A stretch of 64,000 nt of DNA from Kudoa neothunni (lineage: Eukaryota; Animalia; Cnidaria). The notes under the pieces are model-generated. The model saw nothing but the letters and a program-made list of their open reading frames with translations. It did no database searches and was not told the origin of the DNA. A program made the position numbers and the translations under genes. Of the stretch, positions 45,416-64,000 are shown piece by piece. Every line of letters begins with the position of its first letter. Within the stretch, counting starts at the first letter, position 1. The DNA lies in assembly GCA_964304625.1 (NCBI GenBank), contig OZ199839.1:7522966-7586965 (forward strand), given 5' to 3'.

Positions 45416-45488
45416 GGTTGTATGGTGTAATTGGTTAGCATTATGGACTTTGAATCCATCGACCCGAGTTCGAATCTCGGTACGGCCA
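45416..45488 (+). tRNA. tRNA-Gln(TTG), intact; 3' end is of element-A type
   Basis: Cloverleaf: acceptor GGTTGTA/TACGGCC (two G:U pairs), D arm GTGT..GCAT, anticodon stem ATGGA/TCCAT with TTG at 45450-45452, T arm CCGAG-TTCGAAT-CTCGG. A box TGGTGTAATTGG and B box present. Confidence 0.95.
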
Positions 45489-45494
45489 CTCCCT

Positions 45495-45507
45495 CTTTTG
45501 TTTTTTT
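45495..45507 (+). terminator. Pol III terminator-like T-runs
   Basis: CTTTTGTTTTTTT shortly after the discriminator base; repeated in every A unit; equivalent TTTTACATTTTT in the B unit. Confidence 0.7.
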
Positions 45508-45629
45508 GTGGTATTGTCTTTTTTTGGGCTATTTTTTGGCGTTTTTAGCGGCTGCCTTTTATCAGGAAAGTTAAAGTAAGTTCTTTTATTGTTGTTGCTA
45601 ACTTTTTAGGTACATACGACGGTTGGAAG

Positions 45630-48600: not shown

Positions 48601-50876
48601 GTCTTCCACAAATAGAGTTTGTGCTAGCCCCGCTATTTAACTGCTTCATCCGTACAAGCACCATCCCTCAAAGTTGGTTGGAATCAAGACTGGTCTTAAT
48701 TCCCAAATCGAAGGATGCAGACAGCACTGACCCCCTGAATTACCGCCCGATTGCGATAACTCAAACAATCTACCGATTGTTCATGAGTTGTCTTAACAGA
48801 AAACTCAGACCCCTCATCCAACTGTCTCCATCTCAGAAAGGATTTATACAAAGCGATGGCTGTGTCGAACACGCCTTCACCCTACAAGAAATCCTGGATG
48901 ACTCTCGCCGACGCCAGTCAAAAATCAACGCTGTTTGGATCGATATTCAAAAAGCGTTCGATTCGGTACCCCACAACTTTATCCTCCACCATCTACGTCA
49001 ACAGAAAGTTCCTTCAAACATTGTCCAACTCATTGCCAATCTCTACGACAACAGTTACAGTCTGGTGACTGACAAAGACGGCAACAACTCCACAATCAAC
49101 CCCAACGGCCGTGGCGTGAGGCAGGGATGCCCCCTGTCTCCGCTACTCTTCAATTTAGTGATTGACCCCCTTCTGGAAGATATTGCCAACAGTGGAATCG
49201 GCTACCCCCTCAGAGGACACAATATTGGTGCTCAATGCTTCGCAGATGATCTTGTCCTTCTAGCCAACAACGACGGAGATATGGATACCCTTTTGAAGAA
49301 AACCGAAGATTTCCTATCCAAAACCTCCCTGACCGTCAACCACTCCAAGTGCGCGAGCCTTAAAGTAAGTTACATTCAAGGTAGAAGATTCATCAACACC
49401 GTCTCCACAAACTCACCTACGCTTTTTGGAATCCACGTGCCCCCGATGCAAAACTACTACAAATATCTTGGCACCCAATCCAACCTTCAATCCTTCAAGA
49501 ACCTCCCACCTGCTTTTGACGACTTTATTATGAAATTGACAAAAATCTCAAATTCTCCCCTTCTTCCCTTCCAAAAATTAAATCTCCTCAAGATATACGT
49601 ATTCCCGAGCATCGACCACGTAATGAAGAATACCCTGCTCCGAATTGAAGACCTTGCCAAGATTGATGCCCTCATCTTACGAAATGTTCGCCAATGGCTC
49701 AATCTTCCAAACTCCTCAACGAAGAACATCTTCTACATCCCCAACTGTGCTGGAGGACTTGGCTTGAAACAGCTTACGAAGGACTATGCCGCCTTACGGC
49801 TGGCCGCTGGTCTGAATCTGCTGAATTCCAAGGATGAAACCATCCAACTTGTAGCAAGACAGTCCCTTCAAGAAATCTGTGCCAAACGAAGCAACCACTC
49901 CATGGATCCACTCACCTATCTTCATCTGGATGAAGAACCTTGCGTGTCTCGAGACATTCGAAGTCTTATGTCTTCAATGCGTTTGAACCGCAAATCAATC
50001 AAAGTGGACCTCCTCCAACCTTCTGAAGATCTAAACCACATGGAGATTGACGACGAAAGTCTCAATCCTCCCATTTTCCCTCCAAAAAATCCAACTTTCC
50101 AACCCACCCGCATCAAGAAGCTCCGTTGGCACCTACAATCCAACCATCTCCGTCTACTCAAGGCCCAAGTAGACCAAGGACGCTCCGCTGGCTGTTTTAG
50201 TCAACACGCTGAATCCAACTCGTGGACCCGAACCGGTAATATAAAAATTTCATCATTTAGGTTCGGTCTCATGGGTAGAATTAACGTGCTCCCGACAATG
50301 ACAGTGCTACACCGTGCCCAATCTACGCTTGATACACAATGCCGCCGATGTTCGTGCCAAGTGGAAACACTTGGACACATTCTGAATGGCTGTCCAAACA
50401 ACAGAAACGAGATCATCCTTCGCCACAACTCAATTTTAGAATTCATCGCCTCCAAAATCAAGGTTGGAAAAAAGTATGAACTCCTGATCGACCGATTATT
50501 CCCCGATGGTGTCCTAATTGGCGACCGACGACCAGACATCCAACTTATCCACCGCCGCTCCAAGACGATAATCGTAGCTGACGTCTCCGTCTGCTATGAA
50601 TCATCCCTACAACGCATGGACGAGGTAAGAGAGCACAAAATCCGGAAATACGCCGACGAGTTTGCTCTACTTGAACAAGCTGGCTGGAAGATTCTCCCAA
50701 CTGCGCTCATCTTTGGATCCCTCGGCTCTCACCACCCGCTCAATTCCCAGGCTTACACCCTCCTCCACATTCAAAACCAGAAGAGAGTGAAAACCTTGAT
50801 GAAAAACATCACAACCAATCTGATCGAAAGTTCCCACATGATTTGGAATAATCATGTGAGAACGACTAGATCCTAA
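45630..50876 (+). CDS. 1748-aa retrotransposon protein (RT, CCHC knuckle, restriction-like endonuclease)
   Basis: AVGTDGI, NYRPIAI, QKGF, WIDIQKAFDSVPH, GVRQGCPLSPLLFN, FADD, YKYLG, GGLG, CRRC..VETLGHILNGC, RHN, RPD, ADV, KIRKY. Confidence 0.97.
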   Translation: MENTTVLSENSIDHLKDTCPELTRVILTYFQAWEKASIKRRRKPQLCIKANEIVKISKLIFKAKSDISVLCRNRPKLPTTEKTPNFEDTDFVDISIEANDVSYSDRVAIRKLQTNLSRNRRSLNFLYDEFMTLVQKAVDDAEFPAELLNVDGSVDISADLKFFPVFPNQPLLINEAHVTEKRVMKATANGEIIIDDSPNVVLSVENVVVVPTSPEVVNSANSANNETTLELPAQPISPLSSSLHSLDVNSVNSAKSVTLTKSNVNSKCISKIKKVKNPIPHLSTPEYDHSLHNNRIFNLNNQTCSEAPILIDENVNISPSLNQNSPQNPSIPEENVQPSLIERSKTFFRAPSLSFNSPLKSANVSIGAMMNNFLNGIVATLSSPESSPKPSQPQNEDDEDNEEYFDSFEEPMQIPHLEIALPLLDVEMMDDAVELRKPQKRRHQDISPSSSPSPSSSPSPSKHPDDNTSNDSSSEDCAPKKAHLAPITNSQPPPLSLIVSPDENFLSSQDITKFIRDVRRKTRRRTKKQITPRPMRITRSAAKLLSSQSQSQESQRPLPTPPNPPALAPITTVEVISSPSRPRSPNPPTPNPTKNVASTPEVITNSPSTATTAPTAPTDVANKSFCFDPIDENNPPILEFSNIPIHNDVNSNINNDVIILDTATTTEDHIENRIEETHDDIDIDVDVEMPLNFENQPLREATTQDVMEVMRERIGNNYGLPAASVTPSNQRNPSDPSPSNVHTTDDIIDDNDDVNADPPQDEQPPTNLSKYQLRKLEEEKKLKAAASMMKHLINHIGSTATCDTLYAQFLETAIEHAKELKLHRVPFTRPNDNDAENREASPYDEHNVVRNNNPNDPSTTFVRRIQRPLTKRAHERRLRGLYRTNMKRCFHEVVNDPPKWCTASATQITEALTPNLSNPPPIPEEAPPQNASPIQQDDDNAPIQSQRDIYDFQRNYSDIHISPEDVLCALEKANKDTAVGTDGIQMTFWKRLPQIEFVLAPLFNCFIRTSTIPQSWLESRLVLIPKSKDADSTDPLNYRPIAITQTIYRLFMSCLNRKLRPLIQLSPSQKGFIQSDGCVEHAFTLQEILDDSRRRQSKINAVWIDIQKAFDSVPHNFILHHLRQQKVPSNIVQLIANLYDNSYSLVTDKDGNNSTINPNGRGVRQGCPLSPLLFNLVIDPLLEDIANSGIGYPLRGHNIGAQCFADDLVLLANNDGDMDTLLKKTEDFLSKTSLTVNHSKCASLKVSYIQGRRFINTVSTNSPTLFGIHVPPMQNYYKYLGTQSNLQSFKNLPPAFDDFIMKLTKISNSPLLPFQKLNLLKIYVFPSIDHVMKNTLLRIEDLAKIDALILRNVRQWLNLPNSSTKNIFYIPNCAGGLGLKQLTKDYAALRLAAGLNLLNSKDETIQLVARQSLQEICAKRSNHSMDPLTYLHLDEEPCVSRDIRSLMSSMRLNRKSIKVDLLQPSEDLNHMEIDDESLNPPIFPPKNPTFQPTRIKKLRWHLQSNHLRLLKAQVDQGRSAGCFSQHAESNSWTRTGNIKISSFRFGLMGRINVLPTMTVLHRAQSTLDTQCRRCSCQVETLGHILNGCPNNRNEIILRHNSILEFIASKIKVGKKYELLIDRLFPDGVLIGDRRPDIQLIHRRSKTIIVADVSVCYESSLQRMDEVREHKIRKYADEFALLEQAGWKILPTALIFGSLGSHHPLNSQAYTLLHIQNQKRVKTLMKNITTNLIESSHMIWNNHVRTTRS

Positions 50877-51047
50877 CAAAATTATCAAATCTTCCTACTT
50901 CATCGTGCATCTGCTGATTCCAATATCCATCCATCCATCCATCAATATGTCCACCATTCCAATCTACACAAATCAACATTAGTTTAGTTAGTCTAGTCAC
51001 TAAAAGTAACTTATTTATTAATCACGATAGCATTCGTTAGTTTTCGG

Positions 51048-51083
51048 AATCCATCGACCCGAGTTCGAATCTCGGTACGGCCA
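51048..51083 (+). repeat. 3' half of tRNA-Gln, A-type acceptor TACGGCCA
   Basis: Identical to 45453-45488; no 5' half upstream. Confidence 0.95.
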
Positions 51084-51224
51084 CTCCCTCTTTTGTTTTT
51101 TTGTGGTATTGTCTTTTTTTGGGCTATTTTTTGGCGTTTTTAGCGGCTGCCTTTTATCAGGAAAGTTAAAGTAAGTTCTTTTATTGTTGTTGCTAACTTT
51201 TTAGGTACATACGACGGTTGGAAG

Positions 51225-54200
51225 ATGGAGAACACAACAGTTTTGTCGGAAAACTCCATTGACCATTTGAAAGACACGTGTCCCGAACTGACTCGAGTGA
51301 TTTTGACCTACTTCCAGGCATGGGAGAAAGCCTCAATCAAACGAAGAAGGAAACCTCAACTTTGTATTAAAGCCAACGAAATCGTAAAGATTTCAAAGCT
51401 CATTTTCAAGGCTAAAAGCGACATTTCCGTTTTATGTCGGAACCGACCGAAGTTGCCAACTACAGAAAAAACGCCGAATTTTGAAGATACGGATTTTGTG
51501 GATATCTCGATTGAAGCAAATGATGTATCTTATTCAGATCGAGTCGCAATCCGAAAACTGCAGACAAATCTGTCCAGAAACAGACGAAGTCTCAATTTTC
51601 TGTACGATGAGTTTATGACTCTAGTACAGAAAGCTGTAGATGACGCCGAGTTTCCAGCAGAGTTGTTGAATGTTGATGGATCTGTTGACATTTCAGCGGA
51701 CCTCAAATTCTTCCCGGTTTTCCCGAATCAGCCACTTTTAATTAATGAAGCGCATGTCACAGAAAAGCGTGTGATGAAGGCCACTGCTAATGGTGAAATT
51801 ATTATTGATGATTCGCCCAATGTTGTTCTAAGTGTTGAGAATGTTGTTGTTGTTCCTACTTCTCCAGAAGTGGTGAACTCAGCAAATTCTGCGAATAATG
51901 AGACGACATTGGAGTTGCCCGCGCAGCCAATTTCGCCATTGTCGAGTTCATTGCATAGTTTGGACGTTAATTCAGTTAATTCAGCTAAATCAGTCACTTT
52001 AACTAAATCTAATGTTAATTCTAAGTGCATTTCTAAAATTAAAAAAGTAAAAAACCCCATTCCGCATCTTTCAACTCCCGAATATGACCATTCTTTGCAT
52101 AATAATAGGATTTTTAACTTAAATAATCAAACTTGTAGTGAAGCTCCTATTTTAATCGACGAGAATGTTAATATTTCCCCTTCCTTAAATCAAAATTCAC
52201 CCCAAAATCCATCAATTCCGGAAGAAAATGTTCAACCTAGCCTCATCGAACGGTCCAAAACCTTCTTTAGAGCGCCTAGTTTGTCGTTTAATTCCCCTTT
52301 GAAATCAGCTAATGTCTCCATTGGTGCGATGATGAATAACTTTTTAAATGGCATTGTTGCCACTTTATCAAGTCCCGAATCATCTCCGAAACCCTCTCAA
52401 CCACAAAATGAAGATGATGAAGACAACGAAGAATACTTTGACTCGTTCGAAGAGCCAATGCAGATCCCCCATCTGGAAATTGCACTTCCTCTCTTGGATG
52501 TGGAAATGATGGATGACGCGGTCGAGCTGCGAAAGCCTCAAAAACGACGACATCAAGATATCTCCCCCTCGTCTTCTCCATCTCCATCTTCTTCACCTTC
52601 CCCCTCAAAGCACCCTGACGATAACACCTCCAACGACTCCTCCAGTGAAGACTGTGCCCCTAAAAAGGCCCATCTGGCACCCATTACCAATTCCCAACCT
52701 CCGCCTTTGTCCCTAATTGTCTCACCTGATGAAAACTTTTTATCCTCTCAGGATATTACCAAATTCATCCGAGACGTTAGGAGAAAGACGCGCAGAAGAA
52801 CCAAGAAACAAATCACCCCTAGACCGATGAGAATAACGAGATCTGCAGCAAAACTGCTCAGTTCTCAGTCTCAATCTCAAGAATCTCAACGTCCCCTTCC
52901 AACCCCGCCCAATCCACCTGCATTGGCACCCATCACTACTGTGGAAGTCATCTCATCACCCTCGAGACCCAGGTCTCCAAATCCTCCAACTCCCAATCCA
53001 ACCAAGAACGTGGCCTCTACACCGGAAGTTATCACCAACTCTCCATCTACTGCAACTACTGCACCTACTGCACCTACTGACGTGGCAAACAAATCATTCT
53101 GCTTCGACCCAATCGACGAAAACAACCCACCAATCCTTGAATTCTCCAACATACCCATCCATAATGATGTTAATAGCAATATTAACAACGACGTCATTAT
53201 CCTCGACACGGCCACCACTACTGAAGATCATATTGAAAATCGCATTGAAGAGACTCATGATGATATTGATATTGATGTAGATGTAGAAATGCCCCTCAAC
53301 TTTGAAAATCAACCCTTGAGAGAAGCAACCACCCAAGACGTCATGGAAGTGATGCGAGAACGAATTGGAAACAATTACGGACTCCCAGCTGCATCAGTTA
53401 CTCCATCCAATCAACGTAACCCTTCTGACCCATCACCATCAAACGTCCACACAACTGACGATATAATCGACGATAACGACGACGTTAATGCTGATCCACC
53501 CCAAGACGAGCAACCTCCTACCAACTTAAGTAAGTACCAATTGAGGAAATTAGAGGAGGAAAAGAAGCTCAAAGCTGCAGCGTCGATGATGAAGCACTTG
53601 ATCAATCATATAGGGTCCACTGCAACGTGTGACACCCTATATGCCCAATTTTTAGAGACCGCCATTGAGCATGCTAAAGAGCTCAAACTCCATCGAGTTC
53701 CCTTTACACGCCCCAATGACAATGACGCCGAAAATAGAGAAGCCAGCCCGTATGATGAGCACAATGTGGTGAGGAACAACAATCCGAATGACCCAAGCAC
53801 TACTTTCGTACGAAGGATACAACGCCCCCTAACAAAGAGAGCCCACGAGAGGAGACTCCGTGGACTCTACCGCACCAATATGAAGCGTTGTTTCCACGAA
53901 GTAGTGAATGACCCGCCAAAATGGTGCACTGCCTCTGCTACACAAATAACAGAAGCACTCACCCCTAATTTGTCCAATCCTCCACCAATTCCAGAAGAAG
54001 CTCCACCTCAAAACGCCTCTCCAATCCAGCAAGATGATGATAACGCTCCCATCCAATCCCAACGAGACATCTATGATTTCCAGCGGAACTACTCAGACAT
54101 CCACATCTCCCCCGAAGACGTTCTTTGTGCGCTTGAAAAAGCAAACAAAGACACAGCAGTTGGAACCGATGGTATCCAAATGACATTTTGGAAACGTCTT

Positions 54201-56471
54201 CCACAAATAGAGTTTGTGCTAGCCCCGCTATTTAACTGCTTCATCCGTACAAGCACCATCCCTCAAAGTTGGTTGGAATCAAGACTGGTCTTAATTCCCA
54301 AATCGAAGGATGCAGACAGCACTGACCCCCTGAATTACCGCCCGATTGCGATAACTCAAACAATCTACCGATTGTTCATGAGTTGTCTTAACAGAAAACT
54401 CAGACCCCTCATCCAACTGTCTCCATCTCAGAAAGGATTTATACAAAGCGATGGCTGTGTCGAACACGCCTTCACCCTACAAGAAATCCTGGATGACTCT
54501 CGCCGACGCCAGTCAAAAATCAACGCTGTTTGGATCGATATTCAAAAAGCGTTCGATTCGGTACCCCACAACTTTATCCTCCACCATCTACGTCAACAGA
54601 AAGTTCCTTCAAACATTGTCCAACTCATTGCCAATCTCTACGACAACAGTTACAGTCTGGTGACTGACAAAGACGGCAACAACTCCACAATCAACCCCAA
54701 CGGCCGTGGCGTGAGGCAGGGATGCCCCCTGTCTCCGCTACTCTTCAATTTAGTGATTGACCCCCTTCTGGAAGATATTGCCAACAGTGGAATCGGCTAC
54801 CCCCTCAGAGGACACAATATTGGTGCTCAATGCTTCGCAGATGATCTTGTCCTTCTAGCCAACAACGACGGAGATATGGATACCCTTTTGAAGAAAACCG
54901 AAGATTTCCTATCCAAAACCTCCCTGACCGTCAACCACTCCAAGTGCGCGAGCCTTAAAGTAAGTTACATTCAAGGTAGAAGATTCATCAACACCGTCTC
55001 CACAAACTCACCTACGCTTTTTGGAATCCACGTGCCCCCGATGCAAAACTACTACAAATATCTTGGCACCCAATCCAACCTTCAATCCTTCAAGAACCTC
55101 CCACCTGCTTTTGACGACTTTATTATGAAATTGACAAAAATCTCAAATTCTCCCCTTCTTCCCTTCCAAAAATTAAATCTCCTCAAGATATACGTATTCC
55201 CGAGCATCGACCACGTAATGAAGAATACCCTGCTCCGAATTGAAGACCTTGCCAAGATTGATGCCCTCATCTTACGAAATGTTCGCCAATGGCTCAATCT
55301 TCCAAACTCCTCAACGAAGAACATCTTCTACATCCCCAACTGTGCTGGAGGACTTGGCTTGAAACAGCTTACGAAGGACTATGCCGCCTTACGGCTGGCC
55401 GCTGGTCTGAATCTGCTGAATTCCAAGGATGAAACCATCCAACTTGTAGCAAGACAGTCCCTTCAAGAAATCTGTGCCAAACGAAGCAACCACTCCATGG
55501 ATCCACTCACCTATCTTCATCTGGATGAAGAACCTTGCGTGTCTCGAGACATTCGAAGTCTTATGTCTTCAATGCGTTTGAACCGCAAATCAATCAAAGT
55601 GGACCTCCTCCAACCTTCTGAAGATCTAAACCACATGGAGATTGACGACGAAAGTCTCAATCCTCCCATTTTCCCTCCAAAAAATCCAACTTTCCAACCC
55701 ACCCGCATCAAGAAGCTCCGTTGGCACCTACAATCCAACCATCTCCGTCTACTCAAGGCCCAAGTAGACCAAGGACGCTCCGCTGGCTGTTTTAGTCAAC
55801 ACGCTGAATCCAACTCGTGGACCCGAACCGGTAATATAAAAATTTCATCATTTAGGTTCGGTCTCATGGGTAGAATTAACGTGCTCCCGACAATGACAGT
55901 GCTACACCGTGCCCAATCTACGCTTGATACACAATGCCGCCGATGTTCGTGCCAAGTGGAAACACTTGGACACATTCTGAATGGCTGTCCAAACAACAGA
56001 AACGAGATCATCCTTCGCCACAACTCAATTTTAGAATTCATCGCCTCCAAAATCAAGGTTGGAAAAAAGTATGAACTCCTGATCGACCGATTATTCCCCG
56101 ATGGTGTCCTAATTGGCGACCGACGACCAGACATCCAACTTATCCACCGCCGCTCCAAGACGATAATCGTAGCTGACGTCTCCGTCTGCTATGAATCATC
56201 CCTACAACGCATGGACGAGGTAAGAGAGCACAAAATCCGGAAATACGCCGACGAGTTTGCTCTACTTGAACAAGCTGGCTGGAAGATTCTCCCAACTGCG
56301 CTCATCTTTGGATCCCTCGGCTCTCACCACCCGCTCAATTCCCAGGCTTACACCCTCCTCCACATTCAAAACCAGAAGAGAGTGAAAACCTTGATGAAAA
56401 ACATCACAACCAATCTGATCGAAAGTTCCCACATGATTTGGAATAATCATGTGAGAACGACTAGATCCTAA
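51225..56471 (+). CDS. 1748-aa RT-RLE protein, identical to copy 1
   Basis: Identical translation in the ORF track. Confidence 0.97.
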   Translation: MENTTVLSENSIDHLKDTCPELTRVILTYFQAWEKASIKRRRKPQLCIKANEIVKISKLIFKAKSDISVLCRNRPKLPTTEKTPNFEDTDFVDISIEANDVSYSDRVAIRKLQTNLSRNRRSLNFLYDEFMTLVQKAVDDAEFPAELLNVDGSVDISADLKFFPVFPNQPLLINEAHVTEKRVMKATANGEIIIDDSPNVVLSVENVVVVPTSPEVVNSANSANNETTLELPAQPISPLSSSLHSLDVNSVNSAKSVTLTKSNVNSKCISKIKKVKNPIPHLSTPEYDHSLHNNRIFNLNNQTCSEAPILIDENVNISPSLNQNSPQNPSIPEENVQPSLIERSKTFFRAPSLSFNSPLKSANVSIGAMMNNFLNGIVATLSSPESSPKPSQPQNEDDEDNEEYFDSFEEPMQIPHLEIALPLLDVEMMDDAVELRKPQKRRHQDISPSSSPSPSSSPSPSKHPDDNTSNDSSSEDCAPKKAHLAPITNSQPPPLSLIVSPDENFLSSQDITKFIRDVRRKTRRRTKKQITPRPMRITRSAAKLLSSQSQSQESQRPLPTPPNPPALAPITTVEVISSPSRPRSPNPPTPNPTKNVASTPEVITNSPSTATTAPTAPTDVANKSFCFDPIDENNPPILEFSNIPIHNDVNSNINNDVIILDTATTTEDHIENRIEETHDDIDIDVDVEMPLNFENQPLREATTQDVMEVMRERIGNNYGLPAASVTPSNQRNPSDPSPSNVHTTDDIIDDNDDVNADPPQDEQPPTNLSKYQLRKLEEEKKLKAAASMMKHLINHIGSTATCDTLYAQFLETAIEHAKELKLHRVPFTRPNDNDAENREASPYDEHNVVRNNNPNDPSTTFVRRIQRPLTKRAHERRLRGLYRTNMKRCFHEVVNDPPKWCTASATQITEALTPNLSNPPPIPEEAPPQNASPIQQDDDNAPIQSQRDIYDFQRNYSDIHISPEDVLCALEKANKDTAVGTDGIQMTFWKRLPQIEFVLAPLFNCFIRTSTIPQSWLESRLVLIPKSKDADSTDPLNYRPIAITQTIYRLFMSCLNRKLRPLIQLSPSQKGFIQSDGCVEHAFTLQEILDDSRRRQSKINAVWIDIQKAFDSVPHNFILHHLRQQKVPSNIVQLIANLYDNSYSLVTDKDGNNSTINPNGRGVRQGCPLSPLLFNLVIDPLLEDIANSGIGYPLRGHNIGAQCFADDLVLLANNDGDMDTLLKKTEDFLSKTSLTVNHSKCASLKVSYIQGRRFINTVSTNSPTLFGIHVPPMQNYYKYLGTQSNLQSFKNLPPAFDDFIMKLTKISNSPLLPFQKLNLLKIYVFPSIDHVMKNTLLRIEDLAKIDALILRNVRQWLNLPNSSTKNIFYIPNCAGGLGLKQLTKDYAALRLAAGLNLLNSKDETIQLVARQSLQEICAKRSNHSMDPLTYLHLDEEPCVSRDIRSLMSSMRLNRKSIKVDLLQPSEDLNHMEIDDESLNPPIFPPKNPTFQPTRIKKLRWHLQSNHLRLLKAQVDQGRSAGCFSQHAESNSWTRTGNIKISSFRFGLMGRINVLPTMTVLHRAQSTLDTQCRRCSCQVETLGHILNGCPNNRNEIILRHNSILEFIASKIKVGKKYELLIDRLFPDGVLIGDRRPDIQLIHRRSKTIIVADVSVCYESSLQRMDEVREHKIRKYADEFALLEQAGWKILPTALIFGSLGSHHPLNSQAYTLLHIQNQKRVKTLMKNITTNLIESSHMIWNNHVRTTRS

Positions 56472-56642
56472 CAAAATTATCAAATCTTCCTACTTCATCG
56501 TGCATCTGCTGATTCCAATATCCATCCATCCATCCATCAATATGTCCACCATTCCAATCTACACAAATCAACATTAGTTTAGTTAGTCTAGTCACTAAAA
56601 GTAACTTATTTATTAATCACGATAGCATTCGTTAGTTTTCGG

Positions 56643-56678
56643 AATCCATCGACCCGAGTTCGAATCTCGGTACAACCA
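56643..56678 (+). repeat. 3' half of tRNA-Gln, B-type acceptor TACAACCA
   Basis: Differs from A-type at two acceptor bases; perfectly complementary to GGTTGTA at 45416. Confidence 0.95.
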
Positions 56679-56819
56679 CTTCCATTTTACATTTTTGGAA
56701 CTATTGTCTTTTTTGCGGCTATTTTTTGGCGTTTGTTGCGGCTGAATTATATTTAGGAAGCTAAAGTAAGTTTTTTTCTTGTTGTGGTTAATTTTTTAGG
56801 AAATTCCTACCGTGGGAAG

Positions 56820-59800
56820 ATGCCGAATTCAACGAATATTACTGAAAACTCCAACAACCATACTGCAACCGCATGCGCCGAAGTGTCACGAACTGTTTTA
56901 ACCTACTTCCAGGCTTGGGAAGTAGCCAAAATTAAACGTACACGTAGGCCCAAACTATGTGGAAAAGCACGCGAAATCGTTAAAATGATAGAGCGCATTA
57001 ACACCGTCAAAATTGAAATTTCCGATCTATGTCGCCATGGCCCGAATTCGGAAAATTTGCCAAATGTTGAAAACTTGGAAACTGCTCTATCTACCGTCAA
57101 TCCTGATATTCCGTTAGATGTAATTAATGATACTAAGGCTGCAGTTAAAAAATTACGGGCAAAGATGTGGCGGAACAAGCGTAGTCTTGGATTAATGTAT
57201 GAGGACTTTATATCCTTAATACAAGAATCTGTTGACAACGATGAATTCCCTGCTGAATTGTTTAATGAAGATGGGTCTGTTGATATATCAAAAGATCTCA
57301 AATTCTTTCCAGTTAAAGCTAACCAACCAAATCTCCTAGAATCGGACATTGTTAACTCAAAGCGCATTTTTAAAGCAGATTCAAGTGGCAAATTTGTGAA
57401 TGTAGATTGTCCTAGTGATGTTCTTAATGATGTTAATAATTCTGGTCCATCAGCTACTCCAGTAGTTGAGAAATCAGCAATTATTGAAGATTCCCGAACG
57501 ACATCAAACATGCCCGCGCATCCCAATCCGCCATTACAAAGTTCCTTGCATAGCTCCTTTACTAGACCAGTTAACAATCCGGTTCCTGCGCCTAATCTTA
57601 ACTCTAATTTACCTCCTTCATCTAGTTTAATTCATTCTAATCTTAATTCTAACCTTAGCGCTAAAAACCCTAATTCCAATTATTTAAATAATCCATCTAG
57701 CTCCCTTAATCCTTCAAATTTTAAAACTATTCCTTCTAATAATTCTGATACTATTAATTCCCAATCTATTTCTAATTCTAGCTCTAAACTTAACGCCACG
57801 CTTAACTCTAAAACTAACAAATTAACCAATTCTAGTTCTAATACTAAAATTAACATTCCTTCCAATATTGCGCCAACTTATGATCATTCCTTGAATAGTA
57901 ATAAGATTTTTAACACTTTAAACAATCCTTCTCTTAATGCCAAAAACAACAACATGCCCAGAAATTCTAAAAAAAAACTCTCTGAAGTGTCGTCCGAACA
58001 CTCACACTCTGCGGGTCTTAACCCTCCTCTTGAAGAAAATCAAGAACCCCTGCTGAAAGATAGGTCCAAAACCTTCTTCAAAGCTCCCCCTTCATCCAAA
58101 AACAAGATTAACATGTCCGTTGGCCAAATGATGAATGATTTCCTCAACGATGTTGCTACTGCTTCGATTCCAGACCAGAGCAATCATTGTTCCAATCTTA
58201 ACAGTTTGCTTGAAGTTGAAATCCCCTTAATCGATATGATGAATGATGACACCAACACAAAACTTCCCACTAAACGTAAACATCATTCAATCTCTCTCAA
58301 CAATAATGTGGACAACCATCAACATTGTAAATCAGCTCCTGAAGATTGTACTCAAGATTTTTCACCCAAGAAAACCAGATTCTCTCTGGACAAGTCTCCA
58401 TTCTCATCACCTCCCTTTTCTTCCAAAATTCCACGACTTTCCCTAATTAAATCCCCTAAAGAATTTCAAATTGCCTCACAAGAAATTAATGACTTTATAA
58501 GAATGGCAAAAGCGAAATCCTTTATTGGGAATAATTCGAAGAAACCAAAATCCACAAGAAATCCACCAAATCGTAACAACACTTCCTCTCCAATGGTTAT
58601 TCCCTCTACATCCCTTCGTCCGCAAACACAAGAAGCTCCCATCACAATTTTGTCCTCTCCCTCTTCTCCGATTAAAGCCCCCGAAGAAAGTCCCATGCAA
58701 GAATTCCTTTATTTCAGCCTAGATGAAAGTGAACACAATGGAAATCCCAACATATCACAACAATCCTTTGTATTCGACCCTATCGATGCAACTTCCCAAC
58801 CTAACCTCAATTTCTCTCTTCTCAATACATCTAATATTGTTGAAGATGAATTCCCCAAAGAAAATCCAGCTAAATTGAATCAACATGAAGTTCCTCAAGA
58901 AGAAAATACTGGACTAAGAACCGTTACCACCCAGGATGTTATGGTGGTCATGCGTGATCGTATTGGCAACAATTATGGTCTCCCTGATCTCCATAGCATT
59001 ACCCCAAACGATGACACAGTTCTACAAAACTCAATTTGTGATCCTGCTCCCTCAAACGCCCACCATAACGCTCCTCCTACTTTCAACAACACTGTCCACG
59101 AGCAATCACAAATAGATCAAGAAGATGCCCAAGATAGAGAACCTTCTAACCTCAACAAATACCAAAAGAGGAAGCTTGAAGAGGAAAAGAAACTAAAGGC
59201 AGCCGCAACAATGATGAAACATCTGTTAAATCATATTGGTTCAAACCAATCTTGCGACGCACTCTACGAAACTTTTCTTTCTTCCGCTATTGAACATGCT
59301 AAGAATCTTAACATGCACCGAATGCCCTTCACTCGCCCTAATGATAATTCGCCCGAAAATCGAGATGAGAACCCCTACAACGAACATAACGTAGTGCGAA
59401 ACAACAACCCCGCCGATCCAAGCCCGACGTTTGTTAGACGAATTCAACGTCCTCTAACAAAAAGTGCCCATGAAAGAAGGCTTCGTGGCTTGTATAGAAC
59501 GAACATGAAGCGCTGTTTCCATGAAATAGTCCAAGATCCTCCCAGATGGTGCACTGCTTCTGCCGACCAAATAGCAGAGTCATTTGCATCCATCTCATCC
59601 ATTCCACCACCTATCATCGACGACGAACCTCTCCCATCTCCTCTCAATTCGAATGCTCCATCACAACATTCACAGATTCAAGACAAAGATCACCAACCAG
59701 GAAAACATTTAGCAGACGATATCTACAACTTTGACATTAACTATTCTGATTTCCATATTTCGCCCGAAGATGTCCTCTTTTCAATAGAGAAAGCCAATAA

Positions 59801-62123
59801 GGACACTGCTGTGGGAACCGACGGTATCCAAATGACCTTTTGGAAACGGTTACCCCAAATTGAATTCGTTCTGGCTCCGCTCTTCAACTACATCCTTCGT
59901 ACGAGTACCATCCCCAAAAGTTGGCTCGAATCAAGACTGGTGCTACTACCCAAATCCAAAGACGCAGCGACTGATAACCCCACTAATTACCGCCCGATCT
60001 CAATCACTCAAACAGTCTACCGATTGTTCATGAGCTGCTTGAATCGAAAACTCCGCCCGATGATAAAGTTATCTCCTGCTCAGAAAGGCTTCATTCAAAG
60101 TGATGGATGTGTCGAACATGCTTTCACTTTACAAGAAATCCTGGACGACTCAAGACGTCATCTCTCCAAAATCAATGCTGTCTGGATAGACATTCAAAAA
60201 GCATTTGATTCTGTCCCACACAATCGTATCATCCACCAACTCCGTCGCCATCACATCCCAACCAACATCGTCAACCTAATTTCCAACCTGCATGAAGGTT
60301 CCTTCAACATCGCAACAGATAAAGAAGGAAACACCTCCAATATCCATCTCAACGGCCGAGGCGTGAGACAAGGTTGTCCCCTGTCTCCCCTCCTTTTCAA
60401 TATGGTTATCGACCCTCTTCTCGATGAGATCGTTAACGGTGGTATTGGCTACCCACTCCGTGGGCAGAACATTGGTGTTCAGTGCTTTGCTGATGACTTG
60501 GTCCTACTAGCGAAGACACCTACAGATATGGATTCCCTCCTAAGAACTGCTGAAGACTTCTTTACGAAAACTTCGTTAACTGTCAACCATTCCAAATGTG
60601 CTAGTCTCAAAGTTAGTTATCTATATAGCAGAAGAGTCATCAACAACCAACTGTCCAACTCACCTCAACTTTTTGGTACCCACATCCCCCCAATGAAGAA
60701 CCACTACAAATATCTTGGAACTCAATCAAATTTACAATCTTTTAAAGACCTTCCACCTGCTTTCGACGATTTCACTCAAAAATTGAAGAAAATCTCCAAC
60801 TCCCCACTCTTCCCATTCCAAAAGATCAATCTTCTCAAGATATATGTAACACCAATGCTAGACCACGTAATGAAGAATACTATCCTCCGTATTGATGATC
60901 TGGCCAAAATTGATGCCCTAATTTTACGCAATGTTCGTCAGTGGCTCAATTTACCCAACTCCTGCACGAAGCATGTATTCTACCTTCCCAATTCTGCTGG
61001 TGGACTCGGCTTAAGACAACTCACCAAGGATTATGCTGCCTTGAGATTAGCCGCTGGGCTCAATCTGTTGAACTCTGCCGATGAACCCATCCAAAAAGTT
61101 GCCCGTCTGTCTCTGGAAGAAATTTGTAATAAGAGGACCAAGAACTCCATGGACCCGTTAACATACCTCCACTTGGATGAAGAACCCTGCGTTTCTCGCG
61201 ATATCAGAAGCCTCTTGTCCTCTATGCGTCTGAATCGCAAATCTATCAAAGTCGACCTTTGCCAACCTTCCGATGATCCCAATCATATGGACATCGATGA
61301 TGAATCCCTCAACCCACCAATTTTTCCACCCAAGAACCCAACCTTCCGTCCCACTCGTATCAAGAAGCTACGATGGCACCTTCAAGCATCCCACCTCAAC
61401 CTCCTCAAAAACCAACCTGACCAAGGACGCTCCGCTGGCTGCTTCAGTCAACACCACGAATCGAACTCATGGACCAGAACCGGTAACATAAAAATATCTT
61501 CTTTTAGGTTCGGTCTCATGGGTAGAGTCAACGTGCTCCCGACTATGACAGTCCTCCATCGCGCCAAATCCACACTCGACACATCCTGCCGCCGTTGCTC
61601 ATGCCAGGTGGAAACACTTGGACACATTTTGAACGGCTGCCCCAACAACAAAAATGAGATAATTCTTCGCCACAACAACGTCCTGGAGACAATTGCCTCT
61701 AAAATCAAAGTGGGCAAGAAGTACGACCTCAAAATTGACCAACTCTTCCCCAATGGTGTCCTTATCGGCGACCGAAGACCCGACATCCAACTCATCCACC
61801 AACGCTCCAAGACCATCATCGTAGCCGACGTCTCCATATGCTACGAATCTTCTGTGACCCGTATGAACGAGGTAAGGGATCATAAGATCCGAAAATACGC
61901 AGATGAGTTTGCCCTGCTTGAACAAGCGGGCTGGAAAGTCCTACCGACTGCCCTCATCTATGGTTCCCTCGGCTCCCACCACCCCCTCAACTCTCAGGCC
62001 TACACCCTTCTCCACATTCAAAACGAGAAGAAAGTGAAGACCCTTATGAAAAACATCACCTCCAACCTGATCGAAAGTTCTCACATGATTTGGAATAATC
62101 ATGTGAGAACGACTAGATCGTGA
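56820..62123 (+). CDS. 1767-aa RT-RLE protein, family B
   Basis: ATG 56820 is in the same GGAAGATG context and at the same 177-nt offset as in A; all catalytic motifs intact. Confidence 0.93.
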   Translation: MPNSTNITENSNNHTATACAEVSRTVLTYFQAWEVAKIKRTRRPKLCGKAREIVKMIERINTVKIEISDLCRHGPNSENLPNVENLETALSTVNPDIPLDVINDTKAAVKKLRAKMWRNKRSLGLMYEDFISLIQESVDNDEFPAELFNEDGSVDISKDLKFFPVKANQPNLLESDIVNSKRIFKADSSGKFVNVDCPSDVLNDVNNSGPSATPVVEKSAIIEDSRTTSNMPAHPNPPLQSSLHSSFTRPVNNPVPAPNLNSNLPPSSSLIHSNLNSNLSAKNPNSNYLNNPSSSLNPSNFKTIPSNNSDTINSQSISNSSSKLNATLNSKTNKLTNSSSNTKINIPSNIAPTYDHSLNSNKIFNTLNNPSLNAKNNNMPRNSKKKLSEVSSEHSHSAGLNPPLEENQEPLLKDRSKTFFKAPPSSKNKINMSVGQMMNDFLNDVATASIPDQSNHCSNLNSLLEVEIPLIDMMNDDTNTKLPTKRKHHSISLNNNVDNHQHCKSAPEDCTQDFSPKKTRFSLDKSPFSSPPFSSKIPRLSLIKSPKEFQIASQEINDFIRMAKAKSFIGNNSKKPKSTRNPPNRNNTSSPMVIPSTSLRPQTQEAPITILSSPSSPIKAPEESPMQEFLYFSLDESEHNGNPNISQQSFVFDPIDATSQPNLNFSLLNTSNIVEDEFPKENPAKLNQHEVPQEENTGLRTVTTQDVMVVMRDRIGNNYGLPDLHSITPNDDTVLQNSICDPAPSNAHHNAPPTFNNTVHEQSQIDQEDAQDREPSNLNKYQKRKLEEEKKLKAAATMMKHLLNHIGSNQSCDALYETFLSSAIEHAKNLNMHRMPFTRPNDNSPENRDENPYNEHNVVRNNNPADPSPTFVRRIQRPLTKSAHERRLRGLYRTNMKRCFHEIVQDPPRWCTASADQIAESFASISSIPPPIIDDEPLPSPLNSNAPSQHSQIQDKDHQPGKHLADDIYNFDINYSDFHISPEDVLFSIEKANKDTAVGTDGIQMTFWKRLPQIEFVLAPLFNYILRTSTIPKSWLESRLVLLPKSKDAATDNPTNYRPISITQTVYRLFMSCLNRKLRPMIKLSPAQKGFIQSDGCVEHAFTLQEILDDSRRHLSKINAVWIDIQKAFDSVPHNRIIHQLRRHHIPTNIVNLISNLHEGSFNIATDKEGNTSNIHLNGRGVRQGCPLSPLLFNMVIDPLLDEIVNGGIGYPLRGQNIGVQCFADDLVLLAKTPTDMDSLLRTAEDFFTKTSLTVNHSKCASLKVSYLYSRRVINNQLSNSPQLFGTHIPPMKNHYKYLGTQSNLQSFKDLPPAFDDFTQKLKKISNSPLFPFQKINLLKIYVTPMLDHVMKNTILRIDDLAKIDALILRNVRQWLNLPNSCTKHVFYLPNSAGGLGLRQLTKDYAALRLAAGLNLLNSADEPIQKVARLSLEEICNKRTKNSMDPLTYLHLDEEPCVSRDIRSLLSSMRLNRKSIKVDLCQPSDDPNHMDIDDESLNPPIFPPKNPTFRPTRIKKLRWHLQASHLNLLKNQPDQGRSAGCFSQHHESNSWTRTGNIKISSFRFGLMGRVNVLPTMTVLHRAKSTLDTSCRRCSCQVETLGHILNGCPNNKNEIILRHNNVLETIASKIKVGKKYDLKIDQLFPNGVLIGDRRPDIQLIHQRSKTIIVADVSICYESSVTRMNEVRDHKIRKYADEFALLEQAGWKVLPTALIYGSLGSHHPLNSQAYTLLHIQNEKKVKTLMKNITSNLIESSHMIWNNHVRTTRS

Positions 62124-62349
62124 TTGTCCTAATTGTTCTTATCCAACCCTCGACAACAACCTCATTCCATTGATGATACGAGATGATGATATGATGATAA
62201 CCTCCAAAAATCCACCTTCAACTTCCACCACCAAATTTCCACATCCATCCATTCTATGCTACTGTCCATTTCCAAATTTCTACATCCAAGCCAACTTCCT
62301 AAAAACTATATTAGATCATATACACATTAGCATAGATTAATTTTCGGTA

Positions 62350-62385
62350 AATCCATCGACCCGAGTTCGAATCTCGGTACGGCCA
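62350..62385 (+). repeat. 3' half of tRNA-Gln, A-type
   Basis: Identical to 45453-45488. Confidence 0.95.
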
Positions 62386-64000
62386 CTCCCTCTTTTGTTT
62401 TTTTGTGGTATTGTCTTTTTTTGGGCTATTTTTTGGCGTTTTTTAGCGGCTGCCTTTTATCAGGAAAGTTAAAGTAAGTTCTTTTATTGTTGTTGCTAAC
62501 TTTTTAGGTACATACGACGGTTGGAAGATGGAGAACACAACAGTTTTGTCGGAAAACTCCATTGACCATTTGAAAGACACGTGTCCCGAACTGACTCGAG
62601 TGATTTTGACCTACTTCCAGGCATGGGAGAAAGCCTCAATCAAACGAAGAAGGAAACCTCAACTTTGTATTAAAGCCAACGAAATCGTAAAGATTTCAAA
62701 GCTCATTTTCAAGGCTAAAAGCGACATTTCCGTTTTATGTCGGAACCGACCGAAGTTGCCAACTACAGAAAAAACGCCGAATTTTGAAGATACGGATTTT
62801 GTGGATATCTCGATTGAAGCAAATGATGTATCTTATTCAGATCGAGTCGCAATCCGAAAACTGCAGACAAATCTGTCCAGAAACAGACGAAGTCTCAATT
62901 TTCTGTACGATGAGTTTATGACTCTAGTACAGAAAGCTGTAGATGACGCCGAGTTTCCAGCAGAGTTGTTGAATGTTGATGGATCTGTTGACATTTCAGC
63001 GGACCTCAAATTCTTCCCGGTTTTCCCGAATCAGCCACTTTTAATTAATGAAGCGCATGTCACAGAAAAGCGTGTGATGAAGGCCACTGCTAATGGTGAA
63101 ATTATTATTGATGATTCGCCCAATGTTGTTCTAAGTGTTGAGAATGTTGTTGTTGTTCCTACTTCTCCAGAAGTGGTGAACTCAGCAAATTCTGCGAATA
63201 ATGAGACGACATTGGAGTTGCCCGCGCAGCCAATTTCGCCATTGTCGAGTTCATTGCATAGTTTGGACGTTAATTCAGTTAATTCAGCTAAATCAGTCAC
63301 TTTAACTAAATCTAATGTTAATTCTAAGTGCATTTCTAAAATTAAAAAGTAAAAAACCCCATTCCGCATCTTTCAACTCCCGAATATGACCATTCTTTGC
63401 ATAATAATAGGATTTTTAACTTAAATAATCAAACTTGTAGTGAAGCTCCTATTTTAATCGACGAGAATGTTAATATTTCCCCTTCCTTAAATCAAAATTC
63501 ACCCCAAAATCCATCAATTCCGGAAGAAAATGTTCAACCTAGCCTCATCGAACGGTCCAAAACCTTCTTTAGAGCGCCTAGTTTGTCGTTTAATTCCCCT
63601 TTGAAATCAGCTAATGTCTCCATTGGTGCGATGATGAATAACTTTTTAAATGGCATTGTTGCCACTTTATCAAGTCCCGAATCATCTCCGAAACCCTCTC
63701 AACCACAAAATGAAGATGATGAAGACAACGAAGAATACTTTGACTCGTTCGAAGAGCCAATGCAGATCCCCCATCTGGAAATTGCACTTCCTCTCTTGGA
63801 TGTGGAAATGATGGATGACGCGGTCGAGCTGCGAAAGCCTCAAAAACGACGACATCAAGATATCTCCCCCTCGTCTTCTCCATCTCCATCTTCTTCACCT
63901 TCCCCCTCAAAGCACCCTGACGATAACACCTCCAACGACTCCTCCAGTGAAGACTGTGCCCCTAAAAAGGCCCATCTGGCACCCATTACCAATTCCCAAC
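62350..64000 (+). mobile_element. Family A, copy 3 (runs off the window); ORF from 62528 frameshifted near 63344-63348
   Basis: Matches copy 1 except A5 instead of A6 at 63344-63348 and one extra T in the 5' UTR. Confidence 0.93.

What the first reader, a model, noticed from the sequence alone, without database searches (positions are those of the whole stretch)
56643..56700. The tRNA acceptor strand belongs to the element, not to a plain target-site duplication
Seen: 31 nt (AATCC...CGGTAC) are invariant in all four copies. The next bases track the downstream unit: GGCCACTCCC before every A, AACCACTTCC before B, whichever family lies upstream. The B strand TACAACC pairs perfectly with the 5' strand GGTTGTA, while the A strand TACGGCC gives two G:U pairs. 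Inference: the tRNA at 45416 is a host-5'/element-3' chimera. Family A may derive from a different Gln isodecoder or exploit wobble pairing. How much of the 31 nt is TSD versus element cannot be resolved here.
Basis: partly seen in the sequence, partly recalled or inferred. Interest (0 to 1): 0.85.

Follow-up and report, generated by a model that had tools for sequence, protein, structure and literature searches.

The report
Retrotransposon that rebuilds its tRNA target
Two related R2-like retrotransposons sit head to tail inside a glutamine tRNA gene, and each copy brings its own version of the tRNA's last bases and T-rich tail, so the gene at the front of the array is re-formed as a host/element hybrid; this is an unusual twist on a known kind of site-specific mobile element.

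Summary
A 31-nt stretch (tRNA-Gln positions 37-68) occurs exactly four times (45453, 51048, 56643, 62350). The bases after it follow the downstream unit: GGCCA before each A unit, AACCA before B. The units are R2-superfamily non-LTR retrotransposons, each with one ORF of about 1750 aa carrying a reverse transcriptase, a CCHC knuckle and a restriction-like endonuclease. They are inserted directly 3' of the anticodon of a tRNA-Gln(UUG) gene in an AT-rich, animal-like genome. A1 and A2 are identical over 5595 bp. B is about 61% identical to A overall, yet 35 of the 37 tRNA-derived bases match. The A/B homology runs without a break from the tRNA piece through the T-rich trailer into the 5' leader. 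So the acceptor 3' strand and terminator-like tail travel with the element, and the tRNA at 45416-45488 is best read as a host-5'/element-3' chimera with two G:U pairs. It remains unresolved whether the 31 nt is a staggered-nick duplication, element-borne homology, or both. No uninserted tRNA-Gln gene or outside copy could be fetched. tRNA-targeting relatives and long duplications are already known, so this is a new variant, not a new kind.

The parts
45416..45488 (+). tRNA-Gln(UUG) gene as it stands: host 5' part, shared 31 nt and A-type acceptor 3' strand with discriminator. Inferred host/element chimera.
   Evidence: ARAGORN; Rfam tRNA 63.4 bits; cloverleaf minimum-energy fold with two G:U pairs in the acceptor stem.
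45416..45452 (+). Host-only 5' part of the tRNA (positions 1-36, through the anticodon TTG). Unique in the window.
   Evidence: One match at up to 3 mismatches.
45453..45483 (+). 31-nt copy 1 (tRNA positions 37-68), junction J1 host to A1.
51048..51078 (+). 31-nt copy 2, junction J2 A1 to A2.
56643..56673 (+). 31-nt copy 3, junction J3 A2 to B (start of the finding's interval).
62350..62380 (+). 31-nt copy 4, junction J4 B to A3.
45484..45511 (+). A-type element-borne end of the tRNA (GGCCA = positions 69-73) plus T-rich trailer with T4 (45496-45499) and T7 (45501-45507) runs. The same sequence follows at 51079 and 62381.
56674..56699 (+). B-type element-borne end of the tRNA (AACCA) plus T-rich trailer with T4 (56685-56688) and T5 (56692-56696) runs.
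45453..51047 (+). Unit A1 (5595 bp, counted from the 31 nt to the last base of its 3' UTR).
51048..56642 (+). Unit A2, identical to A1 at all 5595 positions.
56643..62349 (+). Unit B (5707 bp), a diverged family: 61% nucleotide identity to A overall and 64% at protein level.
62350..64000 (+). Unit A3, cut by the window end. Versus A1 it has no mismatches and two homopolymer-run indels, one in the 5' leader and one in the ORF. The visible part of the ORF therefore carries one frameshift, which may be an assembly error.
45630..50876 (+). A1 ORF, 1748 aa, intact (A2 ORF = 51225-56471).
56820..62123 (+). B ORF from its first ATG, 1767 aa, intact (frame open from 56784).
45630..46154 (+). Conserved N-terminal region (about 175 aa) shared by A, B and P0002. 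It matches no Pfam family and has no zinc finger or Myb domain.
   Evidence: low-confidence helical model.
48528..49859 (+). Reverse-transcriptase region of A1 (aa 967-1410 align to solved R2 proteins; Pfam RVT_1 covers aa 1025-1251 = 48702-49382; FADD motif present).
50211..50399 (+). CCHC zinc knuckle (zf-RVT) of A1.
50526..50651 (+). Restriction-like endonuclease motifs of A1 (RRPD, ADVSV, EHKIRKY).
   Evidence: By inspection of the translation; no Pfam model covers this region.
50877..51047 (+). A 3' UTR, ending ...TTTTCGG directly before A37 of the next 31-nt copy. There is no poly(A).
62124..62349 (+). B 3' UTR, ending ...TTTTCGGTA directly before A37 of the next 31-nt copy.

Best explanation
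The region is a head-to-tail array (A1, A2, B, A3...) of two diverged families of a site-specific non-LTR retrotransposon. The element belongs to the R2 superfamily and has a restriction-like endonuclease (RLE). Its target is the tRNA-Gln(UUG) gene, immediately 3' of the anticodon, between positions 36 and 37. Shown: every element 3' end abuts A37. Every element is preceded by the same 31 nt (positions 37-68). The next bases (69-73 and a T-rich, Pol III terminator-like trailer) are family-specific and continuous with that family's 5' leader. The end of the tRNA is therefore carried by the element, and the gene at the head of the array is a host-5'/element-3' hybrid. Inferred mechanism: the bottom strand is nicked at 36/37 and primes reverse transcription from the element RNA's 3' end. 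The element RNA, or its cDNA, carries tRNA-Gln 3' sequence at its 5' end. The top strand is opened at or beyond position 68, and its 37-68 tail anneals to the matching end of the cDNA to prime the second strand. The 31 nt thus end up on both sides of the insert, as a duplication, while everything from position 69 on is copied from the element. Each insertion re-creates a complete tRNA gene upstream. It also leaves a fresh 31-nt target copy, which would favour tandem arrays. The tRNA-derived 5' end is most simply a former long target duplication that became part of the transcript.
For: Four exact 31-nt copies against a chance expectation of 0.01. The strand type tracks the downstream unit at all four junctions, and the identical A1 and A2 are followed by different types. 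A and B match at 35 of 37 tRNA-derived bases, 67% in the trailer, 78% in the rest of the leader and 61% overall, with homology unbroken across the end of the tRNA. The 31-nt identical run is the longest in non-coding sequence; the next longest is 18 nt. The ORFs carry RVT_1 (E 9e-34), zf-RVT and RLE motifs, and the best solved relatives are R2 proteins (E 4e-76). There are no inverted repeats and no second ORF. The ORFs of A1, A2 and B are intact, and the A copies are identical or nearly so, which points to recent activity. Precedents exist in the literature. RLE elements target tRNA-Pro, tRNA-Arg and tRNA-Glu genes, and the S6 figure for planarian LIN15_SM shows 3' junctions in the anticodon arm and a 5' junction after the T arm of tRNA-Arg, a duplication of roughly 35-40 bp (PMC4640811). 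Reptile Utopia families make 20-bp duplications. R2 RNAs can carry up to 36 nt of target sequence at the 5' end, postulated to anneal and prime the second strand (PMC3774820). The position of the second-strand nick decides between deletions and duplications (PMC13486585).
Against: Only one locus is visible. The three A copies are near-identical, so there are just two independent lineages. The host's own 3' end, expected beyond the array, lies outside the window, and no uninserted tRNA-Gln gene is available. After position 68 the A/B divergence is already at background level (3 differences in 10 nt). The two pair-preserving A/G changes could therefore be neutral transitions and do not prove selection for a working tRNA. 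A random 4-mer would complete the acceptor stem about 1 time in 64, so chance is unlikely but not excluded. No transcript data exist. No 5' ribozyme or significant RNA structure was found that could define an RNA 5' end at position 37. T runs are common in this T-rich leader, so their role as a terminator is not demonstrated.
Confidence: 0.7

Rival explanations
1. Plain long target-site duplication for family A. The native host tRNA at this locus already ended TACGGCCA with the A-type trailer, A insertions simply duplicate that host sequence, and only B carries a strand of its own. The tRNA at 45416 would then be native and not a chimera.
For: An insertion order exists (the A copies first, B last, between A2 and A3) that reproduces the array. 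Long duplications are known in this superfamily.
Against: The A trailer and leader are homologous to B's all the way to the start codon at element-like identity, with no boundary. A native acceptor stem with two adjacent U:G pairs would be unusual. The B strand is the perfect complement of the host 5' strand.
Confidence: 0.08
2. The tRNA pieces are remnants of several host tRNA-Gln genes (different isodecoders in a host gene cluster). Each was hit once and lost its 5' half, and the array was then shaped by unequal crossing-over and gene conversion. The pieces would be host DNA, not element DNA.
For: The identity of A1 and A2 over 5595 bp fits segmental duplication as well as re-insertion. Kojima and Jurka could not exclude such recombination for Utopia/U2 arrays in Phytophthora.
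Against: It requires the loss of every 5' half but one. It also requires host spacers that happen to be 67-78% identical between A and B and to run straight into the start codons. The leader is better conserved than the N-terminal coding region, as expected for a functional part of the element.
Confidence: 0.07
3. The element carries the whole 37-73 piece because it functions in the element's own expression, for example the B-box in the 31 nt recruiting TFIIIC to open chromatin, and not for integration homology or tRNA repair.
For: The B-box-like GTTCGAATC lies inside the invariant 31 nt. The 5' leader is unusually well conserved.
Against: There is no direct evidence. Conservation stops sharply at position 68 rather than at the edge of the B-box. 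Invariance is equally explained if the 31 nt are renewed from the target at each insertion.
Confidence: 0.1
4. Assembly artefact: the tandem arrangement, or the identical A1/A2 pair, comes from misassembly of dispersed copies.
For: Identical 5.6-kb tandem copies and homopolymer indels in A3 are typical trouble spots for assemblers.
Against: Junctions J1, J3 and J4 are each unique sequence contexts that read through cleanly. Even if A1/A2 were collapsed to one copy, the tracking pattern (host to A, A to B, B to A) remains.
Confidence: 0.03

Closest known systems
R2 (28S rDNA-specific non-LTR retrotransposons; solved R2Bm and avian R2 proteins)
   Same: Single ORF with a central reverse transcriptase, a C-terminal CCHC knuckle and a PD-(D/E)xK endonuclease. 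Precise 3' junction at one target position and no poly(A). The best solved-structure hits are R2 proteins (E 4e-76).
   Different: The target is a tRNA-Gln gene, not 28S rDNA. No N-terminal C2H2 zinc fingers or Myb were detected, although the same scan finds them in the nearest outgroups P0003 and P0004. No HDV-like 5' ribozyme was detected. The ORF is much longer, with about 950 aa before the reverse transcriptase.
tRNA-gene-specific RLE elements NeSL-1_TV (tRNA-Pro), LIN15_SM (tRNA-Arg) and LIN25_SM (tRNA-Glu) (Kojima and Jurka 2015, PMC4640811)
   Same: RLE-type non-LTR elements whose 3' junction lies inside a tRNA gene near the anticodon arm. For LIN15_SM the supplementary figure shows the tRNA running on through the T arm upstream of the element, a duplication of about 35-40 bp.
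   Different: The target is tRNA-Gln. In the LIN15_SM 5' junction shown, the element does not continue the tRNA, so the upstream copy stays truncated. Here the element supplies positions 69-73 and a T-rich tail. The relationship by descent was not tested because no reference sequences were at hand.
Long-duplication RLE elements: rotifer R9 (Gladyshev and Arkhipova 2009, Gene 448:145; title seen) and reptile Utopia (20-bp TSD)
   Same: The target sequence is duplicated on both sides of the insert, implying a top-strand nick well downstream of the bottom-strand nick.
   Different: In those cases the duplication is taken as plain target sequence. Here the sequence just past the duplication is tRNA-derived but family-specific, so it is element-borne.
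R2 RNAs that keep target (28S) sequence at their 5' end (Eickbush et al. 2013, PMC3774820)
   Same: Target-derived sequence at the RNA 5' end is proposed to let the cDNA anneal to the target and give uniform 5' junctions. This is the same logic as proposed here.
   Different: In R2 the carried sequence is upstream of the insertion site and is produced by a ribozyme, and no duplication results. Here it is downstream-of-site sequence, no ribozyme was found, and a duplication results.
Prokaryotic integrative elements (phages, ICEs) that integrate into tRNA genes and carry a copy of the tRNA 3' end (established knowledge, not tested here)
   Same: The outcome is the same: the host gene is restored with an element-borne 3' end, and the displaced host 3' end lies beyond the insert.
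   Different: The chemistry is entirely different: a tyrosine or serine recombinase and attP/attB exchange against reverse transcription at a nick. No recombinase gene is present.

Membership tests
RLE-type (R2-superfamily) site-specific non-LTR retrotransposons | Single ORF with a reverse-transcriptase domain | tested here: met
   RVT_1 at E 8.8e-34 (A) and 4.1e-33 (B). R2 proteins are the best solved relatives. FADD motif present.
RLE-type (R2-superfamily) site-specific non-LTR retrotransposons | C-terminal CCHC knuckle followed by a PD-(D/E)xK restriction-like endonuclease | tested here: met
   zf-RVT at E 1e-4 to 1.5e-5, below Pfam's gathering score. The RRPD, ADVSV and EHKIRKY motifs were read by inspection; no profile covers the endonuclease itself.
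RLE-type (R2-superfamily) site-specific non-LTR retrotransposons | No terminal repeats; precise 3' end at one target position | tested here: met
   0 inverted repeats, and the only direct repeats are the units themselves. The 3' ends of A1, A2 and B all abut A37.
RLE-type (R2-superfamily) site-specific non-LTR retrotransposons | Insertion by target-primed reverse transcription | not testable with these tools
   Inferred from family membership only.
R2 clade in the strict sense | Target is a fixed site in 28S rDNA | tested here: not met
   The target is tRNA-Gln(UUG), position 36/37.
R2 clade in the strict sense | N-terminal C2H2 zinc finger(s) and Myb DNA-binding domain | tested here: not met
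   No hit at E up to 1-10 over the scanned N-terminal pieces of A (aa 1-1000) and B (aa 1-800). The same scan finds zinc fingers in P0003 and P0004 and Myb in P0003.
R2 clade in the strict sense | HDV-like self-cleaving ribozyme at the 5' end | tested here: inconclusive
   No Rfam ribozyme at E up to 1. The leader folds no better than shuffles (z +0.42 and +0.27). Divergent ribozymes can escape both tests.
tRNA-gene-targeting NeSL/LIN lineage (NeSL-1_TV, LIN15_SM, LIN25_SM) | 3' junction inside a tRNA gene | tested here: met
   compare.
tRNA-gene-targeting NeSL/LIN lineage (NeSL-1_TV, LIN15_SM, LIN25_SM) | RT phylogeny places it in the NeSL clade | not tested
   No named NeSL, LIN or Utopia protein came back from any search. 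The nearest outgroups (P0003, P0004) have an R2-like zinc-finger/Myb N-terminus.
Elements making a plain long target-site duplication (R9, reptile Utopia) | Direct repeat of target sequence on both sides of the insert | tested here: met
   31 nt on both sides of A1, A2 and B.
Elements making a plain long target-site duplication (R9, reptile Utopia) | All tRNA-derived sequence upstream of the insert is copied from the local target | tested here: not met
   Positions 69-70 and the trailer differ by downstream family.
Recombinase-type integrative elements that carry a tRNA 3' end | Tyrosine or serine recombinase gene | tested here: not met
   Only the RT/RLE ORF is present.

The most novel reading that the evidence does not exclude
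A eukaryotic retrotransposon family that is a true target-restoring element. Its RNA would begin with the tRNA-Gln 3' portion (from position 37) plus a Pol III terminator, and read through into the next 31-nt copy at its 3' end. This short terminal redundancy would guide both priming steps. Every insertion would leave behind a working, expressed chimeric tRNA-Gln, so the element would be nearly cost-free to the host. Target recognition would come from a new N-terminal domain that replaced the R2 zinc-finger/Myb module.
Probability: 0.3. Interest if true: 0.75.

Novelty: new variant of a known kind. Interest (0 to 1): 0.6.

Why it matters
Site-specific R2-type elements are the main model for how non-LTR retrotransposons complete their poorly understood second step, joining the 5' end. 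A family whose 5' end is a copy of the sequence just downstream of its own insertion site gives a natural, sequence-readable case of homology-guided 5' joining. It would also show that a retrotransposon can reach the outcome long known for bacterial integrating elements, re-forming the tRNA gene it interrupts. The apparent replacement of the R2 DNA-binding module by an unrelated N-terminal region is a lead on how such elements change targets. If the chimeric tRNA is expressed, mobile elements would be a source of tRNA isodecoder variation.

Tried and rejected
1. The acceptor strand belongs to the 3' end of the upstream unit. Rejected: A1 and A2 are identical but are followed by different strands.
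2. The element's 3' end mimics the tRNA 5' side (shared TAGCATT). Rejected as not significant: 605-972 of 5000 shuffles score as well.
3. Internal junctions form tRNA-like structures. Rejected: no GGYYGTA on the + strand inside the units, and neither ARAGORN nor Rfam calls a tRNA there.
4. A 5' self-cleaving ribozyme or structured leader or 3' UTR. Not found.
5. Outside copies or uninserted tRNA-Gln genes. The 31-nt pattern gave 0 hits in viral, metagenome and genome collections. Protein-alignment scans gave 0 relatives in the same three collections.
7. Fold of the N-terminal region. The model was too poor (pLDDT 52) to justify a fold search.
8. Host identification. A piggyBac fragment gave at best 40% identity. 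A GMPPB-like exon gave 52-59% identity, and all named hits are animals. The host remains unidentified.
9. My recollection that Dada DNA transposons carry part of their target. The Dada paper did not bear this out, so I do not use it.

Steps left out on purpose:
- I did not build a joined host-5'/B-3' tRNA for scoring.

Full report
**Observation**

The 31-nt string AATCCATCGACCCGAGTTCGAATCTCGGTAC occurs exactly four times in the window. All copies are on the + strand, at 45453, 51048, 56643 and 62350, against 0.01 matches expected by chance. The first copy is the 3' part of the only tRNA gene in the window, a tRNA-Gln with anticodon TTG (ARAGORN 45416-45489; Rfam 45416-45488, 63.4 bits). In canonical numbering the 31 nt run from A37, the base after the anticodon, to C68, the third base of the acceptor 3' strand. 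The host 5' part (45416-45452) is unique in the window.

- GGCCACTCCC follows the 31 nt at J1 (host to A1), J2 (A1 to A2) and J4 (B to A3).
- AACCACTTCC follows at J3 (A2 to B), which is the finding's interval.
- TACAACC is the exact complement of the 5' strand GGTTGTA.
- TACGGCC gives U3:G70 and U4:G69, and the tRNA as it stands still folds as a cloverleaf with a 7-bp acceptor stem.

**What the units are**

The spacing is 5595, 5595 and 5707 bp.

| Unit | Span | ORF | State |
|---|---|---|---|
| A1 | 45453-51047 | 45630-50876, 1748 aa | intact |
| A2 | 51048-56642 | 51225-56471, 1748 aa | intact; identical to A1 at all 5595 positions |
| B | 56643-62349 | 56820-62123, 1767 aa from its first ATG | intact |
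| A3 | 62350-64000 | cut by the window end | one frameshift in the visible part |

- Each unit has one long + strand ORF.
- The ORFs carry a reverse-transcriptase domain (RVT_1, E about 1e-33) and a CCHC zinc knuckle (zf-RVT).
- By inspection they also carry a PD-(D/E)xK endonuclease signature: RRPD, ADVSV, EHKIRKY.
- The best solved relatives are R2 retrotransposon proteins (9nl3, 9dou, 8gh6; E 4e-76 to 1e-55).
- There are no terminal inverted repeats and no second ORF.
- The elements are 43-47% GC with strong C over G skew, set in a 28-30% GC flank.
- A3 differs from A1 by no substitutions and two homopolymer-run indels, one in the leader and one in the ORF. Either could be an assembly error.
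- B is 61% identical to A in DNA and 64% in protein.

These are two diverged families of an R2-superfamily, endonuclease-bearing non-LTR retrotransposon. They sit in a head-to-tail array at one position of a tRNA-Gln gene.

**The host**

The flank holds piggyBac-like transposase fragments and a GDP-mannose pyrophosphorylase-like gene with GT..AG introns of about 48-85 nt. The named relatives of the one exon-bearing ORF that I searched are all animals, at 52-56% identity. The host is an AT-rich, animal-like eukaryote that I could not identify.

**Does the acceptor strand belong to the element?**

Three points say yes.
1. The strand type follows the downstream family at all four junctions. The identical A1 and A2 are followed by different types, so the strand cannot belong to the upstream unit.
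2. A and B remain alignable without a break from the tRNA piece into the start codon. Identity is 35 of 37 in the tRNA piece, 67% in the next 30 nt, 78% in the rest of the leader and 59% in the first 180 codons. No point exists where host sequence could end and element sequence begin.
3. If every tRNA piece were a plain duplication of the local target, both types could not arise. At least one family must carry its own strand.

The only escape is that the native host gene already ended TACGGCCA with the A-type trailer. That would require a native stem with two adjacent U:G pairs and a host trailer that happens to be homologous to B's leader. I rate this at about 0.08.

The caveat is that A1, A2 and A3 are copies of one another, so there are two independent lineages and one locus.

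**What the 31 nt are**

Conservation drops sharply at position 68. The 31 nt are identical in A and B, and then there are 3 differences in the next 10 nt, which is the background rate for the leader. The 31-nt run is the longest identical run in non-coding sequence, where the next longest is 18 nt. One longer run of 38 nt lies at the very end of the ORF.

A sharp edge is what one expects if the 31 nt are renewed from the target at each insertion, or are held identical to it by the need to anneal. It is not what one expects from selection for a working tRNA, which should reach position 72. The two A/G differences at positions 69-70 do keep pairing with U3 and U4, but as common transitions they are weak evidence for such selection.

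**Proposed mechanism (inferred)**

The bottom strand is nicked at 36/37 and primes cDNA synthesis. The top strand is opened at or beyond position 68. Its 37-68 tail pairs with the end of the cDNA, which carries the complement of the tRNA piece, and primes the second strand. The result is a 31-nt duplication followed by element-borne positions 69-73 and trailer.

Published observations make each step plausible.
- R2 RNAs can carry up to 36 nt of target sequence at the 5' end, postulated to anneal and prime the second strand (PMC3774820).
- The position of the second-strand nick switches the outcome between deletions and duplications (PMC13486585).
- Reptile Utopia families make 20-bp duplications (PMC4640811).
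- R9 is titled as making an exceptionally long duplication (reference seen).
- The machine-read S6 figure for planarian LIN15_SM shows 3' junctions in the anticodon arm of tRNA-Arg genes. It also shows a 5' junction after the T arm, a duplication of roughly 35-40 bp.

The present family differs from LIN15_SM as shown there in one respect: its own 5' end continues the tRNA to the discriminator base and adds T4-T7 runs.

I could not resolve whether the element RNA starts at position 37 or nearer to position 69. No Rfam ribozyme was found, and neither the leader nor the 3' UTRs show significant structure.

**Comparison with known families**

As an RLE-type non-LTR element the family meets every feature I could test. 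It fails two defining features of R2 in the strict sense.
- The target is not 28S rDNA.
- The N-terminus has no zinc finger or Myb domain, although the same scan finds them in the nearest outgroups P0003 and P0004.

In their place is a region of about 175 aa conserved in A, B and P0002, with no family match. Its predicted structure was too uncertain to search (pLDDT 52).

tRNA-gene-specific RLE elements are already on record for tRNA-Pro, tRNA-Arg and tRNA-Glu. I found no paper on a tRNA-Gln-specific one. I also found none, in the papers searched, describing a retrotransposon that completes the interrupted tRNA gene. The outcome resembles bacterial elements that integrate into tRNA genes and carry the gene's 3' end (established knowledge), but the chemistry is unrelated and no recombinase is present.

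**Limits**

- The 31-nt pattern and a protein-alignment scan found nothing in the viral, metagenome or prokaryote genome collections.
- I did not build a joined host-5'/B-3' tRNA, a consensus or a repaired copy of any unit.
- The decisive functional experiment lies outside what this report may propose. Descriptive substitutes are listed under next steps.

**Verdict**

The object is a new variant of a known kind. Its 5' end is interesting for the mechanism of 5' joining in non-LTR retrotransposition. Interest 0.6.

Noticed in passing
45453-51047 and 51048-56642: Units A1 and A2 are identical at all 5595 positions. A3 shows no substitutions over 1651 nt, only two homopolymer indels. This indicates very recent amplification, by re-insertion or unequal crossing-over, or an assembly effect.
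   Followed up: partly
50835-50872 (A1) and the matching end of the B ORF: The longest identical run between A and B (38 nt) lies in the last codons of the ORF, just before the stop. It exceeds even the 31-nt tRNA piece and may be an RNA signal, for example for binding the element's protein.
   Followed up: no
45577-45609 (A1), 56766-56799 (B): An intron-like segment in the 5' leader is conserved in both families: GTAAGT, then a CTAAC- or TTAAT-type branch-like motif, then TTTTTAG just before the start codon. At 33-34 nt it is shorter than the host's visible introns (about 48-85 nt). Whether it is a splice or trans-splice acceptor signal is unknown.
   Followed up: no
45630-46154 (A1), 56820-57350 (B): The conserved N-terminal region of about 175 aa has no family match. 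The R2-type zinc fingers and Myb seen in the nearest outgroup proteins are absent. About 750 aa of low-complexity, fast-evolving sequence (48% nucleotide identity between A and B) separate it from the reverse transcriptase.
   Followed up: partly
about 50926-50943 (A1 3' UTR), repeated in A2: A short (CCAT)n microsatellite lies in the C- and A-rich, unstructured 3' UTR of family A. The A and B 3' UTRs are only about 40% identical except for the last 30 nt or so.
   Followed up: no
9157-9612 (+), 15807-16298 (-), 30668-31168 (-): Fragments of piggyBac-type transposases (DDE_Tnp_1_7) lie in the host flank. The best outside relative is only 40% identical.
   Followed up: partly
about 22400-23660 (-): A host gene for a GDP-mannose pyrophosphorylase-like enzyme (NTP_transferase) has several short GT..AG introns. 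The named relatives are all animals at 52-56% identity, so the host is probably a divergent metazoan.
   Followed up: partly
46001-64000: The elements show strong strand asymmetry (GC skew about -0.25, A over T) and 43-47% GC against 28-30% in the flank.
   Followed up: no
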